Below are positions 38,884-45,341 of a stretch of 64,000 nt of DNA, piece by piece (the first letter of the stretch is position 1; each line of letters opens with the position of its first letter). Both the position numbers and the translations under genes were made by a program. The DNA lies in contig NW_005434621.1 in NCBI RefSeq assembly GCF_000315625.1, positions 268,246-332,245 on the forward strand, in the 5' to 3' direction. The DNA is from Guillardia theta CCMP2712. Lineage: Eukaryota > Protista > Cryptophyta. The notes below the pieces were generated by a model, which was not told the origin of the DNA, searched no databases, and worked only from the letters and a program-made list of their open reading frames with translations.

Positions 38884-39610
38884 ATTCTCTCTCTCCCTCA
38901 GTCTACAAGTAAACACAACTTACCCTCTGAGCCTTATCCTGCTGACCTCGCCTTCCTCCTCCTCCTCCTCCTCCTCCTCCTCCTCCTCCTCCTCCTCCTC
39001 CTCCTCCTCTCGCAAGTCTAGTTGCTCCTTCTCCTTCTCCTCGTCGATCAAAAAGTCATTGCTGGGCATTTCGCTTTCCCGTTTCCAGAGAGCGCAGGTT
39101 GTTTGTGGTGCCTTGAGATCGAAACCGATTCAAACCAATCGAATCCTTTGTTTTCAAGGTGTTGGAATCGATTTAATCGCAAGGAATCATTGCTACCTTG
39201 GAATTGAATCGGTTGAATCGATAGTGGATGCGACCATGGCGGGATTTTACTGTACGGAGCATGGCCAGAGGAGCATAGAGGAAGGGGAAGAGGAAGGAAG
39301 AGAGGCTTTGATAGAGAAAGATGTAGGAGAGGAAGGAAGTGGAAGAGGAGCAGGAAGGAGTAGAAGGAAGAAGATGAGGAAGGGGATCGTGATAGTGGTG
39401 GTGTAGGTGCATGGGAGGAGATAGAGGTGTAGGAGACTATCAAAACAGGAGGAGGAGCAACGAGAGTTGTCCTGGAGAAGCTGCAGGGGAGGAAAACTTG
39501 GGATAAGAGGGTGAGCGATACCCTGAAACCATCGAGCTATGCTTCCGAGGAGCCTGAGGCCTGCTATACTGACCCGTTGCTTCTAGCGCAACATGAAATG
39601 AGAACAGAGG

Positions 39611-41675
39611 ATGACGTACGCGCTTGCACTGAATCGACACGCGCCATGGAGAATTTCATTCATCTTGTTCTTTCAAATCATTACATGCGAGGTTGCTCTG
39701 CTTGATCGGGACGGAAATCTCGGTGTGAAGGCGTCGACCGAAGGGTGTAACCTCCGGATCCTGCAGCGCCTTCGAGGAGGCGTCGATGACGATGAAGACG
39801 GTCAGGACGGTCATTGAGGAGCGTGACAGTCTTGCTGACATGGCCGCAGGGATCGACAACTTGATCCAAGATGCATACGCGTTCAACAAACAGCCCTCAG
39901 TGCCCGTGGTGACGGATGTATGCGGTGGGGGAGTGGGAGGCTGACGTGTGGGACAGACCCCCGGTCCCTGGAAGCGACAGTTGAGCTCTGATGCACCCAG
40001 AGACTTCAGGGAGAGCACGATCAAACGCCCGAGATTCGCCAGCCATCTGAGGAACTCGACCCTTGCGCTCAGAAATGGCGCAAGGAGTGGGAGAGGTCGG
40101 AATGTAACGCTGTACAGCAACCTCAACGCTAAGTACCAAGTACGGACGAGTGGAAGGTGGAGCTCTCGTGATATGATGTCTTGACTGACTTTCTGACTCT
40201 CTGCTTGTTCGTTGAAGGACTGTCAACTCGACGGCTCTGAAACCGACAAGACCTGTCTTCAACAACAGGCCTGACAACTTCACAGGTTTGTTGTGTCAAA
40301 TCAGAGATCCTAGGACGACCGAAGATAGAGACGGGGTTGAGAGAACACGAGGGATGGTGATGATGACGATGGAAAGGAAGATGATAAAGAAGATGATGGA
40401 TATGATGATCCTGATGGAGAGAATCATGGATACTAGTCAAAGATTTTGAAACTGATTTTTTCATGTTTTGCAGCGGTCAAAGGCAACTTCAACAGTTACT
40501 ACGGCTATCGGAAAGCAAGTGCAATGAATTCGTCGATCGGGAAGGTCTGGATCTGATGTTGTTGTATCAGTCGACATACAAACACAGAAGTTGAAATACA
40601 CACGAAGAAGTTGATTTGCTCGGAGTGCACTGATGCCGCCGATGCAGGTCTTGAAACCCGGAGTCTGGGGCGATCCTCGTTTGGACCTGCTGAAGGCGGT
40701 CAGTACTGGAGGAGGAGGAGGCGGAGGAGCAGGAGCAGGAGCAGGAGCAGGAGGAGCAGGAGGAGCAGGAGGAGGAGGAGGACAAAGAGTGGGAGAAGGG
40801 CAGGGAGGGAGGGAGAGGGCAGGGGGGTAGAACGATGTTGACGAATGGGGGCATGACAATATTCCTGGTCTTTCAGGAGTTTTTCAAGGGGAAGACATGT
40901 TTGGACATAGGTGAGAAGCGTTCTCGTTGTGCAGTGATCGCTCACTCGGTCTTGAGGCTGCAATGCTGGATATCTGACCATGAGCATCGCATACCTGTTC
41001 GAGGTGAGGGAGAGGAGAGGCGGTAGATGATGTGTCAGGATAGAGAGAGGGGGGGGTTGGAAGAGAGGGGAGGGATGGATGGATGGATGGATGGATGGAG
41101 NNNNNNNNNNNNNNNNNNNNNNNNNNNNNNNNNNNNNNNNNNNNNNNNNNNNNNNNNNNNNNNNNNNNNNNNNNNNNNNNNNNNNNNNNNNNNNNNNNNN
41201 NNNNNNNNNNNNNNNNNNNNNNNNNNNNNNNNNNNNNNNNNNNNNNNNNNNNNNNNNNNNNNNNNNNNNNNNNNNNNNNNNNNNNNNNNNNNNNNNNNNN
41301 NNNNNNNNNNNNNNNNNNNNNNNNNNNNNNNNNNNNNGGGGAGGGAGGGGTTAGGGTGATTTTGTGTTGCAGTGCAAGAGCATGATTGGGATCGACTGCG
41401 ACGCTGCTCTGGTCCAGCAGGTCAGCGAGTGACGCGCCTGAGAGATTTCGAACTCATTTGTCGAGCACAACAGGCGAAGAGGGTGAAGAAGAACATCAAG
41501 TGGGGTAAGAGAACTGTGACAAGCTCCTGGCTGCATCCTGACATGCTGATGGAAAAGATTTCGAGAAGGAAGGGAGGAGCAAGTGTCCGGTAGGAACACA
41601 TCTCGTGTGCTCATACGCATCTTTCACTTCCTCTCCTCCTTCTCTCACTCTGCCCCCATTTCCCTCCCATTCCAG

Positions 41676-41706
<31 letters not shown>

Positions 41707-42849
41707 CTTTCCTTCCTTCCTTCTTTCCTCCTTCCTTCATGCTCTTGTCCAGGTGTACTTCCAACATGAAGATTTCATTACCAACGATCATTTCAGAGAC
41801 GTCAGGTTGTTGTCCTGTCTTGCCAGTCACATCCTCACAGGCTCGCAGGTATGACGTCATCACTTGCTTCAGCGTGACAAAAGTAAGGAAGAAGATTCTT
41901 TCCTCCTCCTCCTCCTCCTCCTCCACCACCACCACCACTTCATCCTCTTTATCTTCATGCCCCGGTTGTCCTCCCACTTCTCCTCCTGCTCTCCCCGCTG
42001 CTCCTGCTCCTGCCTCCTGCCGCTCTCTTCTGATGGCCGTCTCTCTACACAATCAGTGGGTCCACCTTGTTCACGGCGATGAAGGGATCAAAAAGATGTT
42101 TCGCAAGTGTTTCGACCTCCTGCAGGTCTTTCCGTCTCCTTCCTGTTCTAGTTAGCTCACAGCTCCTTGGTAGGATGACGGGATTCTGATCCTGGAGCCT
42201 CAGCCGTGGAGGTAGAAGGAGCTTCATGTCCCCGCCATGCTGACATGCGCCTGTGTGTACCGGCAGGTCATACCACAACAAGAGGAAAGTTTCGGCTGAG
42301 GTGCGAAGATGTTTGAGTTTTGACTTGACGTTTTTGGGCCTTCTTGTGGTGTCCTTGTCATCTGACCTGTTCTCTGTTGTGTTTTGAGCTGTCTCCTGTT
42401 TTGCTTTTTCGCTACATCTTGTTGTTTTCGTTCTGACTGTTCGCTCTGCCAAGATCGAAGCGATATATAATAGCATTCGCATCCGCCCGAACCTCTTCGT
42501 CAACGAGACCCTTCCCTGTGAGTTTTCCTCCTCGACCCTCCTGTGCTCTCCCACTCACTTGCTGTGTGAAGCTGCTGGATTCCTGGTGGAAGACTTGGGT
42601 GAGATGACGTGAAGAGTGAAGGGGAGGGAGGAGGAGAGGAGGAGACGAGGCAGAGGGGAGGAGGGGAGTGTAGAGGATGGACGGTCGGCAAGAAGAAGAT
42701 GAGAGGAAGGGTAGGAGGAGGATGGTTGGAGAAGGAGGGAAGGGTTGATGTCCTTTGGTGAAGTATTTTGACCCTCAGGTACTCCGGAGGGGATGACAGC
42801 TGGGTTCACTCGACATGTCTATCTGTGCAAGAAGAAGAAGGAGACTTAA
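39611..42849 (+). CDS. Bin3/MePCE-family RNA methylphosphate-capping SAM methyltransferase with an N-terminal extension
   Basis: Exons GNFNSYYGYR, DPRLDLLK, CLDIG/CNAGYLT, IGIDCDAALV, YDVITCFSVTK/WVHLVHGDEG, GILILEPQPW, GFTRHVYL give the Bin3 signature; stop TAA at 42847-42849. Confidence 0.9.
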
Positions 42850-43099: not shown

Positions 43100-45341
43100 T
43101 TAGGCCGCAAAGTTGTACTTGCTGGGGTTCTTGAAGACGTCCATGATGATGGCCTCGGGGGAGCCAGCGGCCGGCTGATGGCAGTACTCCCACCGAGCCG
43201 TCTCGGGAAGAGACATCAGGATAGACTCAGTGCGGCCTCCTGTCGAGCTAAGGTGAGACGAGGAGGAGGGGTAGGAAGTGTAGCAGATGTAGGAGGAGCT
43301 TTGGTAACAATAGTGAGGGAGGAGGAGGAGGAGGAGGAGGAGGAGGAGGAGGAGATGTGATGTAACCCACCGGTCTTGAGGCCAAAGATGGTTCCGCGAT
43401 CGTAGACAAGGTTGAACTCGGCGTACCTTCCGCCTGAGGAGGATGATAAGAAATTGACAGGGAGGAGGAGGAGGAGGAGAGATCTCACGTCTAAGCTGCT
43501 GCCATTCCTTCTCCTCGGCGGTGAAGGCATCGTTCTTGTGCTTCTCAATGATGGGGAGGTAGGCGTCCGGCACGCTCATAACGGCATCCTGAAGTGAGAG
43601 TGTGAGGAGGTGGCGGGGGAGGGAGAGAGGAAGAAGCGAGGGAGGGGGGATGAAGGAGTGAGGGAGTGGAGGAGAGAGGAAGCAAATGGAGGGAGGGAGG
43701 GAGGAGTGCACGGACCTTGCAGAACTCGAAGATCTTCTCAGGGGCGCGGTCGTTGAGGTCGTCGAAGAAGATGCCTCCGAGCCCACGAGTCTCCCCTCTG
43801 TGCCTGAGAGTGGAGAGTGAGCACCGGAAAGACGCCAGGGACGATGGGACGAGGAGGAGACGTGTAGGAGAGAAGAGGAAGGGGGGGGGGGGGGGGGGGG
43901 AAGGAGGAGGAGGAGGAGGATGACGATGACGATGACTGAACGAGGATGGGAGGATCGTGAGTGAGCGAAAGGCGGCAAGGGATGGGGATGGTGAAATCCC
44001 CTGACNNNNNNNNNNNNNNNNNNNNNNNNNNNNNNNNNNNNNNNNNNNNNNNNNNNNNNNNNNNNNNNNNNNNNNNNNNNNNNNNNNNNNNNNNNNNNNN
44101 NNNNNGAGGAGGAGGAGGAGGAGGAGGAGGAGGAGTAGTGTTGTGGTTGGAAGACTCACTTGATGTAGTAGTACTCATCAGCCCATGCCTTGAACCTAGA
44201 GGAGGAGTGTGAGTTAGACCCGATGGAATGGAGATTCGCAGGAGCCAGCAACAAGAGAAATCAAAGGGGGAGGAGGGAGGAGGAGGAGGAGGAGGAGGAG
44301 GAGGACGAAGGATATGCAGCACGTCTGCTCACTTAGGATGGAAGTCCTTGTCGTGCTTGTCGCAGACATTCTTGAGGGTGCTATGGAAGTGCTTCATGTC
44401 CTCCTCCACGAGGTAGCTGGGGGTGATATCCTGTCCTCCTCCGAACCACCAGTTGCCTCCCTCAGTTTCCTGCCACCCCGTCAGCCAAGGGGATGAGGAA
44501 GAGGGAGGAGCTAGAGGGAGGAGCTAGAGGGAGGAGCTAGAGGGAGGAGCTAGAGGGAGGGAGGGAGGAGCAACTTACGAAGTATCTGTAGTTGAAGTGC
44601 ATGGTTGGGCAGTGGGGATTGCGAGGGTGCATAACCTATGTGACTGTCAGCAGCCGGCCGACCGCGCGATCTCCCTCCTACCGAGCTGAGCCCGCAGGCA
44701 AAGAAGGGGACGCGATCGCCGGGAGCATAGCCCTTGGCACGATCGTTGTTGCTGAACTTGAGGCGATCATTGGCAGCCTGAGAAACACGTCACTTCTCGT
44801 CCTCCCCATCCCCCCCGTCCTCCTCCCTCCTCCTCCTCCTCCTCCTCCTACATTGAGCGCCTCGAACGGCATGGTGCCGTGGACGACCGCAAGGTTCACT
44901 CCAGCCTTCTCCCACACTTTTCCTCCAGACATGACGCGGGTGAGGCCTCCTCCTCCGTCCTCACGAGCCCACGGGTCCTCGATAAACTTGCCCTGCCCAT
45001 CGCAGTCCTCGACAGACTTGCCTGCGGCGCCAACGTCAACGCATGCATCCTTGCTGGCAGAGAGCTGCCGTACAGATGTAAGCCTGAGCATCTCTGAGCA
45101 TCTTCTCCATCTTCGTCCTCATCTCTGCGTTGACAGGAACGTCGACAGCAACCATCTGCACGGGTCTACATCAGCCCGACGCTCGCTGGCACGAGAAAGC
45201 TCTCACCCTAGTAGAGATGGCAGCTGGAGCGAGGTTGGAGCGCGAGACGCGGAAGCTTGGAAGTGATGAAGGAAGGAATCCGCTCACAGGGTTGACAACC
45301 ATTGTCATGGTTGTAGCAATCAGGAAAGAACGCATGAACAT
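43100..45341 (-). CDS. hemF: Plastid-targeted oxygen-dependent coproporphyrinogen III oxidase (multi-exon)
   Basis: Presequence [24 protein letters not shown]; motifs [68 protein letters not shown]. Confidence 0.96.
44503..44560. repeat. 13-bp intronic tandem repeat (GGGAGGAGCTAGA) x about 4
   Basis: Seen directly inside a hemF intron. Confidence 0.85.

What the first reader, a model, noticed from the sequence alone, without database searches (positions are those of the whole stretch)
39611..42849. Bin3/MePCE RNA-capping methyltransferase with a signal peptide and a ubiquitin-like RLRGG site
Seen: exon 1 reads MTYALALNRHAPWRISFILFFQIITCEVA-LLDRDG...LRILQRLRGG-VDDDEDG and splices in frame to a complete Bin3 domain. 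Established: MePCE/Bin3/Bmc1 enzymes act in the nucleus on 7SK/U6 RNAs; in cryptophytes a signal peptide without +1 Phe is typical of periplastid-compartment import; LRGG is the ubiquitin C-terminal site cleaved by deubiquitinases. Inference: a host-encoded snRNA capping enzyme imported to serve the nucleomorph, with its leader possibly removed by a DUB-like protease after GG.
Basis: partly seen in the sequence, partly recalled or inferred. Interest (0 to 1): 0.72.

Follow-up and report, generated by a model that had tools for sequence, protein, structure and literature searches.

The report
Leader-bearing second MePCE gene in Guillardia
The alga Guillardia theta has two RNA-capping methyltransferase genes, and this one carries a conserved organelle-type entry leader, so it is a good but untested candidate for the enzyme that caps U6 RNA in the relict second nucleus (nucleomorph).

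Summary
A transcript-derived protein (P0007, 406 aa) maps at 100% onto the window as 19 GT-AG exons, 39611-42849. It reaches the methyltransferase domain through three more small exons, not directly. The N gap lies inside intron 8 and removes no residues.

The protein is MePCE-type: Pfam Bin3 at 112 bits and a fold TM of 0.85 to human MePCE. The leader has a basic start, a 12-15 residue hydrophobic core, a basic stretch ending in LRGG, then an acidic stretch. The same layout occurs in Hanusia phi and in two uncultured relatives. It occurs in none of about 120 other Bin3 proteins.

G. theta also has a second, leaderless, NLS-rich, canonical MePCE gene on contig C85. A published study reports that nucleomorph U6 has a protected 5' end. 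Import into the periplastid compartment and nucleomorph is therefore the best reading, at about 0.5, but it was not tested here.

The leader is not ubiquitin-like beyond the pentapeptide. Cleavage by a deubiquitinase remains speculation. I could not run SignalP, obtain RNA reads or include red-algal sequences.

The earlier scan note s1-433781 named the organism; an exact protein match confirmed it here. Verdict: a new member of a known kind, of moderate interest.

The parts
39611..39800 (+). Exon 1: start codon and the whole leader (residues 1-63 plus the first base of codon 64)
   Evidence: ORF. Exact match to residues 1-64 of P0001 and P0007. Spliced mapping.
39653..39688 (+). Codons 15-26: hydrophobic core of the putative signal peptide, preceded by a +2 n-region
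   Evidence: Kyte-Doolittle 11-residue maximum is 2.29 at residue 15. Leaderless Bin3 proteins give -0.7 to -1.4. AlphaFold helix 11-29.
39767..39781 (+). Codons 53-57: RLRGG, at the switch from a basic to an acidic segment
   Evidence: LRGG followed by x-D is invariant in four lineages. Charge is +1 to +5 before it and -4 to -6 after it. Shuffle P is 0.011 and 0.001 in the two environmental sequences.
39850..40285 (+). Exons 2-4 (39850-39908, 39957-40156, 40218-40285): acidic helix, then a disordered basic linker with a conserved KRPR NLS-like patch
   Evidence: mapping. pLDDT below 50 for residues 77-173. KRPR is conserved in Hanusia and L017.
40474..41003 (+). Exons 5-8 (40474-40544, 40648-40698, 40877-40910, 40957-41003): the GNF..YYGYR motif, DPRL, and SAM-binding motif I
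   Evidence: Alignment to MePCE. Near-invariant columns.
41004..41372 (+). Intron 8, which holds the assembly gap 41101-41337. Simple repeats flank the gap.
   Evidence: The transcript protein joins exons 8 and 9 directly. The alignment to MePCE across the junction has no gap.
41373..42849 (+). Exons 9-19 (41373-41420, 41474-41504, 41558-41589, 41753-41805, 41849-41882, 42057-42125, 42174-42211, 42267-42300, 42454-42517, 42572-42598, 42779-42849): motif II, the Bin3 domain proper, and stop TAA at 42847-42849
   Evidence: PF06859 covers residues 296-402. The only exon that reaches the Pfam cut-off on its own is 42057-42125.

Best explanation
This is GUITHDRAFT_141309, a nuclear gene of Guillardia theta for a MePCE/Bin3-type SAM-dependent methyltransferase that methylates the gamma-phosphate at RNA 5' ends. 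It is one of two such genes in the genome.

Its N-terminus has the layout of a bipartite targeting sequence: a signal peptide, then a short basic transit-peptide-like stretch with no aromatic residue near the start. After that come an acidic helix and a disordered linker with a KRPR nuclear-import-like patch.

Most likely route (inferred): the protein enters the ER lumen co-translationally, crosses the periplastid membrane into the periplastid compartment, loses its leader near the conserved LRGG, and enters the nucleomorph. There it would place the gamma-monomethyl cap on nucleomorph-encoded U6 snRNA. The leaderless paralogue on C85 would serve the host nucleus.

Shown here: the gene model, the family and fold, conservation of the leader, and the existence of the second paralogue. 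Inferred: signal-peptide function, compartment, substrate and cleavage site.
For: - Gene model: P0007 maps at 100% as 19 GT-AG exons. P0001 and P0007 are named G. theta and MMETSP records.
- Family: PF06859 at 112 bits. Human MePCE E 6.6e-38 against BCDIN3D 9e-8. Foldseek best hits are MePCE 6DCC and 6DCB, TM 0.85, 36% identity. The domain has pLDDT 83-98.
- Leader: Hanusia phi P0008 is 67% identical overall and has the same leader. In L017 the leader, GLRGG and Bin3 form one 601-aa ORF. L014 has a matching leader ORF upstream. All four share the same hydropathy and charge pattern. None of about 120 other Bin3 proteins has the leader and LRGG together.
- Tree: the leader-bearing sequences form a clade with 99/96 support, and the second Guillardia gene falls outside it.
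- Second paralogue: collinear exon hits on C85, an 18-exon model of 363 aa with a basic N-terminus and no hydrophobic segment, and best local match to fish MePCE at 1.7e-65.
- Need for the enzyme: PMC6461891 shows nucleomorph U6 is Terminator-exonuclease resistant.
- Precedent: one of four G. theta H2A genes carries such a leader without an aromatic +1 residue and is assigned to the nucleomorph (PMC5443833).
Against: - No signal-peptide or ASAFind-type predictor could be run, and there are no localisation data.
Transcript evidence is a single MMETSP contig ORF.
- The Guillardia transit-like stretch holds three acidic residues and has net charge of only about +1 to +2. Acidic charge hampers import (PMC3017844).
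- In the two environmental relatives an F-V-P follows the hydrophobic core. If F is at +1, that would point to the stroma instead.
- The organism behind L017 is unidentified.
- This clade lacks the long insert between motif II and the Bin3 region that canonical MePCEs carry, so the substrate may differ.
- Origin is unresolved, because the tree has no red algae.
- Absence of Bin3 from the nucleomorph genome was not tested.
Confidence: 0.5

Rival explanations
1. The leader sends the enzyme all the way into the plastid stroma. There it would methylate the 5'-triphosphate ends of plastid primary transcripts, or another substrate.
For: The environmental relatives have F-V-P just after the hydrophobic core, which recalls the aromatic +1 rule for stromal import (PMC3017844). 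The transit-like stretch has net positive charge in all four sequences. The clade lacks the canonical MePCE insert, so its substrate could be new.
Against: In Guillardia and Hanusia no aromatic residue lies within about ten residues of any plausible cleavage site. The conserved KRPR patch fits import into a nucleus-like compartment. No plastid RNA gamma-methyl cap is known.
Confidence: 0.12
2. The hydrophobic segment is an uncleaved signal anchor, or the protein stays in the ER or nuclear-envelope lumen or the secretory path. The enzyme then has nothing to do with the nucleomorph.
For: The hydrophobic run extends to about 17-19 residues if the CE[VI]AL stretch is counted. That stretch is conserved between Guillardia and Hanusia, which is unusual for a cleaved c-region.
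Against: An RNA methyltransferase has no known substrate in the ER lumen. The core holds polar Q/T or H residues and is 12-15 residues long, which is signal-peptide-like. The basic-then-acidic layout is typical of a transit peptide boundary.
Confidence: 0.12
3. The leader has no targeting role, or is bypassed by an alternative start or splice form. The protein then works in the host nucleus through its KRPR patch, as a diverged second MePCE with another RNA substrate.
For: The KRPR patch is conserved. With intron 1 retained, ATG 39786 opens an in-frame leaderless ORF of 375 aa (model B). Splice variants exist: P0001 differs from P0007, and Hanusia P0002 is partly spliced.
Against: The leader layout and LRGG are conserved in four lineages. 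In the Hanusia intron-retaining form the leader frame continues, so the alternative-ORF trick is not conserved. A canonical nuclear paralogue already exists.
Confidence: 0.12
4. Sub-hypothesis of the first reader: after import the leader is cut off exactly after RLRGG by a deubiquitinase-like protease of the periplastid compartment.
For: LRGG is invariant in four lineages, and in Guillardia and Hanusia the wider 11-residue stretch is 9 of 11 identical against about 28% elsewhere in the leader. It sits exactly at the charge switch where a mature N-terminus is expected. From general knowledge, the SELMA import machinery includes ubiquitin enzymes and a deubiquitinase.
Against: There is no ubiquitin fold: Pfam finds nothing in the leader, and AlphaFold gives low-confidence helices at 11-29 and 41-55. 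From general knowledge, most deubiquitinases need the ubiquitin body. An Arg at -2 or -3 also fits M16-type processing peptidases. I found no published LRGG motif in transit peptides.
Confidence: 0.08

Closest known systems
Human MePCE (BCDIN3), Drosophila Bin3, S. pombe Bmc1
   Same: Same Pfam family over the full profile. Conserved GN[YF]..YYGYR, LDIGCN.G, G.D.D, SVTKW.HL, EPQPW and GF.R.VYL motifs. The predicted fold superposes on MePCE bound to the 7SK 5' end at TM 0.85.
   Different: It has an N-terminal hydrophobic leader with LRGG, seen in no other Bin3 protein surveyed. The linker between motif II and the Bin3 region is short, lacking the long insert of canonical members. Activity and substrate are untested.
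G. theta paralogue 2 (G000:C85:90476-92691, my manual model)
   Same: Same family and same genome, and also intron-rich with 18 exons.
   Different: It has no leader. Its N-terminus is a basic KKRKR-type stretch. It keeps the canonical insert and matches fish MePCE and plant At5g51130-type proteins best. It falls outside the leader clade in the tree. It reads EIQEW where the family has EPQPW.
[quoted passage not shown]
   Same: One gene copy among several carries a signal peptide plus a transit-like extension without an aromatic +1 residue. The other copies have no extension.
   Different: The H2A case has experimental support in that paper; this one has none. I could not retrieve the H2A leader to compare motifs.
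Ubiquitin, ISG15 and NEDD8 C-terminal tail
   Same: The pentapeptide RLRGG is identical to the ubiquitin tail.
   Different: There is no beta-grasp domain in front of it, the predicted context is helical, and in relatives only LRGG is kept (ALRGG, GLRGG).

Membership tests
Bin3/MePCE methyltransferases (PF06859) | Pfam Bin3 domain above the gathering score | tested here: met
   112.1 bits against a cut-off of 27, profile positions 1-109 of 109.
Bin3/MePCE methyltransferases (PF06859) | SAM-binding motif I (LD.GCN.G) and the acidic motif II | tested here: met
   Aligned without gaps to MePCE. D223, G225, N227, G229, D248 and D250 are invariant in 34 sequences.
Bin3/MePCE methyltransferases (PF06859) | N-terminal GNY..YYGYR RNA-end-binding motif | tested here: met
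   G176, N177, Y181, Y182, G183, Y184 and R185 fall in near-invariant columns. Guillardia has F for the first Y.
Bin3/MePCE methyltransferases (PF06859) | MePCE-type rather than BCDIN3D-type | tested here: met
   Sequence E 6.6e-38 against 9.3e-8. Fold TM 0.85 against 0.63.
Bin3/MePCE methyltransferases (PF06859) | Gamma-phosphate methyl transfer to U6 or 7SK | not testable with these tools
   Needs an enzyme assay.
Cryptophyte nucleus-encoded periplastid/nucleomorph-targeted proteins | Cleavable N-terminal ER signal peptide | tested here: inconclusive
A basic n-region and a hydrophobic core of 12-15 residues are present.
Cryptophyte nucleus-encoded periplastid/nucleomorph-targeted proteins | Transit-peptide-like stretch with non-negative net charge | tested here: met
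   Net +1, +3, +5 and +4 in the four sequences, followed by -4 to -6. Rule taken from PMC3017844.
Cryptophyte nucleus-encoded periplastid/nucleomorph-targeted proteins | No aromatic residue at +1 of the transit-like stretch | tested here: met
   Residues 25-35 of Guillardia and the matching Hanusia stretch hold no F, Y or W. The two environmental relatives are ambiguous.
Cryptophyte nucleus-encoded periplastid/nucleomorph-targeted proteins | A separate leaderless copy for the host compartment | tested here: met
   Paralogue on C85.
Cryptophyte nucleus-encoded periplastid/nucleomorph-targeted proteins | Localisation in the periplastid compartment or nucleomorph | not testable with these tools
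   Needs GFP fusion or immuno-EM.
Cryptophyte nucleus-encoded periplastid/nucleomorph-targeted proteins | Endosymbiont (red-algal) ancestry | tested here: inconclusive
   The tree backbone is unresolved and holds no red-algal sequence.
Ubiquitin-like proteins | Beta-grasp fold or Pfam ubiquitin domain ahead of the GG tail | tested here: not met
   No Pfam hit in exon 1 or in P0007 residues 1-200. The model shows helices with pLDDT 45-65.

The most novel reading that the evidence does not exclude
LRGG followed by an acidic patch is a dedicated maturation or recognition signal for this import route. It would mimic the ubiquitin tail and be cut or bound by the ubiquitin-handling machinery of the periplastid compartment (SELMA and its deubiquitinase). 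That would be the first sequence-defined processing site for periplastid pre-proteins.
Probability: 0.08. Interest if true: 0.8.

Novelty: new member of a known kind. Interest (0 to 1): 0.5.

Why it matters
Cryptophyte nucleomorphs keep a U6 snRNA gene, and its RNA has a protected 5' end. No enzyme for that cap has been named, and no paper in the library links the nucleomorph with MePCE or Bin3.

This gene is a concrete, testable candidate. It would add RNA 5'-end capping to the list of nucleomorph functions run from the host nucleus.

The conserved LRGG at the presumed leader/mature boundary is a small, checkable lead on how periplastid pre-proteins are processed, a step that is still undefined.

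Tried and rejected
- Pfam on single exons: only the exon at 42057-42125 reaches the cut-off, because the exons are too short.
I redid it with numeric coordinates. An earlier script of the same kind for the window gene had run.
- Joined models: no hand-joined spliced model was sent to any search tool. The database protein P0007, identical to the spliced model, was used instead. Its database search was left out.
- Profile search with A3: swamped by the candidate cap, and it returned four proteins.
- Metagenome scan: no further close leader-bearing loci.
- Organism of the environmental contigs: neighbour ORFs have no Pfam family. The 1476-aa neighbour found only itself. The Atlas gave no taxon. 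Two more neighbours have no match in G. theta.
- Direct exon 1 to exon 5 splice (model A, 673-nt intron) and my own exon limits for exons 2, 3 and 10: superseded by the transcript mapping.
- Comparison with the published nucleomorph H2A leader: the PF16211 hits I inspected showed no leader, so I dropped it.

Full report
**What genome this is.** The window is contig C53:268246-332245 of an 87.1-Mb, 669-contig assembly. An exact-sequence look-up names the protein encoded here as EKX42362 / XP_005829342, GUITHDRAFT_141309, of Guillardia theta CCMP2712. This confirms the organism named in an earlier scan note.

**Gene model and the gap.** Reading the DNA and its three forward frames showed an intron-rich gene. 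My first grammar-only models showed that three different 5' structures were all open.

- A search of 1.84 billion representatives with exon 1 alone returned a 390-aa protein whose first 64 residues are identical to exon 1.
- Its 90% cluster also holds P0007, a 406-aa complete ORF from an MMETSP transcript.
- A strict spliced mapper, requiring exact protein match and GT-AG introns only, places P0007 on the window at 100% as 19 exons from 39611 to 42849.
- Exon 1 therefore belongs to the mRNA. It is followed by three short exons before the methyltransferase part.
- The N run 41101-41337 lies in intron 8 (41004-41372). The two flanking exons join directly in the transcript protein, and the joint aligns gap-free with human MePCE. 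The program's question about continuity is answered: nothing coding is missing.
- The deposited JGI model differs from the transcript. It lacks the last exon and runs into intron 18, and it uses an exon-2 donor 9 nt downstream.

**What the protein is.**
- P0007 hits Pfam Bin3 over the whole profile at 112 bits.
- It matches human MePCE at E 6.6e-38 and BCDIN3D only at 9e-8.
- An AlphaFold model built on a 34-sequence alignment has pLDDT 83-98 for residues about 200-406. Its best fold matches are MePCE bound to the 7SK 5' end, at TM 0.85 and 36% identity.
- The family's signature motifs are present.
- The clade lacks the long insert that canonical members carry between motif II and the Bin3 region.

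**The leader.** Residues 1-57 consist of three parts:
- a +2 n-region;
- a hydrophobic core, with an 11-residue Kyte-Doolittle maximum of 2.29;
- a 28-32 residue stretch of slightly positive charge ending in RLRGG.

The next 25 residues have charge -6. The model gives low-confidence helices at 11-29, 41-55 and 62-76, and disorder at 77-173. Pfam sees no ubiquitin domain. The ubiquitin likeness is therefore limited to the pentapeptide.

**Conservation of the leader.**
- Hanusia phi, the sister genus, has a full-length orthologue (P0008, 67% identical) with the same leader, and a partly spliced isoform.
- Around the motif 9 of 11 residues are identical, against about 28% elsewhere in the leader.
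- The next closest relatives are from uncultured eukaryotes. In the JGI contig L017 one 601-aa ORF runs from a Met through a hydrophobic core, a basic stretch, GLRGG and an acidic stretch into the Bin3 domain. That contig is 72% GC, so long open frames are cheap there.
- In the Tara contig L014 a Met-started ORF upstream on the same strand has the same layout with ALRGG. Population variants show frame-breaking indels just upstream of that Met and only an in-frame 3-nt indel after it.
- Shuffling the first 120 residues gives LRGG at positions 35-70 with P 0.011 and 0.001.
- Among about 120 other Bin3 proteins none has both features.
- In a maximum-likelihood tree the four leader-bearing sequences form a clade with 99/96 support.
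- A 1476-aa neighbour on the Tara contig has its best G. theta match on the same scaffold, C53, at 44% identity and E 9e-60. By scaffold size the chance of that is about 0.006. This suggests the Tara organism is a cryptophyte relative. It is a single observation.

**The second paralogue.**
- The Pfam model alone found only this gene. A profile of diverse Bin3 proteins found a collinear series of exon hits on contig C85.
- My manual model has 18 GT-AG exons and 363 aa. The first 6-nt exon is speculative.
- It has a basic, hydrophilic N-terminus with no hydrophobic segment.
- No signal-like start lies in the 1.7 kb upstream.
- The Hanusia leader matches nothing else in the genome.
- Locally it matches fish MePCE best (1.7e-65) and plants at about 40%. 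It falls outside the leader clade.

**Literature.**
- PMC6461891 reports that nucleomorph-encoded U6 and other snRNAs of G. theta survive Terminator exonuclease. Its authors infer classical 5' structures, a gamma-monomethyl group for U6.
- PMC5443833 describes the same logic for histone H2A: one copy with a signal peptide plus a transit-like stretch lacking an aromatic +1 residue, assigned to the nucleomorph.
- PMC3017844 shows that periplastid import tolerates neutral but not acidic net charge, and that stromal import needs positive charge plus an aromatic +1 residue.
- No paper in the library joins the nucleomorph with MePCE or Bin3, or cites the locus tag.

**Reading.** The best explanation is a nucleus-encoded, leader-bearing MePCE paralogue imported into the periplastid compartment and nucleomorph, probably to cap U6. 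The conserved KRPR patch in the linker fits a last step of import into a nucleus-like compartment.

Several things keep confidence at about 0.5:
- no predictor was run and there are no localisation data;
- the Guillardia transit-like stretch is weakly charged;
- the environmental relatives have an ambiguous F-V-P after the hydrophobic core;
- the ancestry is unresolved.

Cleavage after GG by a deubiquitinase is possible but has no support beyond the motif. An Arg at -2 or -3 equally suits an ordinary processing peptidase.

**Limits.**
- RNA reads could not be obtained.
- Red-algal and other cryptophyte sequences are missing from the tree.
- The nucleomorph genome is not part of G000.
- No hand-joined spliced sequence was sent to a search tool.

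Noticed in passing
window 42599-42612 and 39909-39917: The deposited model EKX42362 (P0001, 390 aa) reads through the donor of intron 18 and ends five codons later, so it misses the last exon with the conserved GF.R.VYL motif. It also uses an exon-2 donor 9 nt downstream of the one in the MMETSP transcript. This is either mis-modelling or alternative splicing.
   Followed up: partly
window 39786-39917: If intron 1 is retained, ATG 39786 (in another frame of exon 1) opens an ORF that runs through the intron into exon 2 in frame. That would give a leaderless 375-aa protein (model B). It could be a dual-targeting device or could be chance. The Hanusia intron-retaining isoform does not share it.
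   Followed up: partly
window 39593-39601: A two-codon upstream ORF (ATG AAA TGA) ends 10 nt before the main start codon.
   Followed up: no
window 41079-41100 and about 41678-41708: Tetranucleotide repeats, of GGAT type next to the gap and CTGC type in intron 11, together with purine-rich or CT-rich low-complexity introns. The repeat at the gap edge probably caused the assembly break.
   Followed up: no
window 43103-43975, minus strand: The downstream neighbour, in convergent orientation, encodes the C-terminal part of a coproporphyrinogen III oxidase (PF01218, E 5e-20).
   Followed up: partly
G000:C85:90476-92691 (L013:2977-5192): The canonical second MePCE paralogue reads EIQEW where the family has the nearly invariant EPQPW, and YYSYR for YYGYR. 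Its first 6-nt exon and 277-nt first intron are my guess.
   Followed up: partly
L099:2046-6473 and G000:C53:510141-514826: A 1476-aa PAS-domain protein lies 8 kb from the Bin3 gene on a Tara Oceans contig. Its best G. theta match (44% identity, E 9e-60) is on the same scaffold as GUITHDRAFT_141309, about 200 kb away. This suggests possible conserved linkage with an uncultured marine cryptophyte relative.
   Followed up: partly
P0002 (Hanusia phi, 104 aa): A partly spliced Hanusia transcript keeps intron 1 in frame (16 extra residues after the acidic patch) and then runs into intron 2. This shows that the intron-1 position is shared with Guillardia.
   Followed up: no
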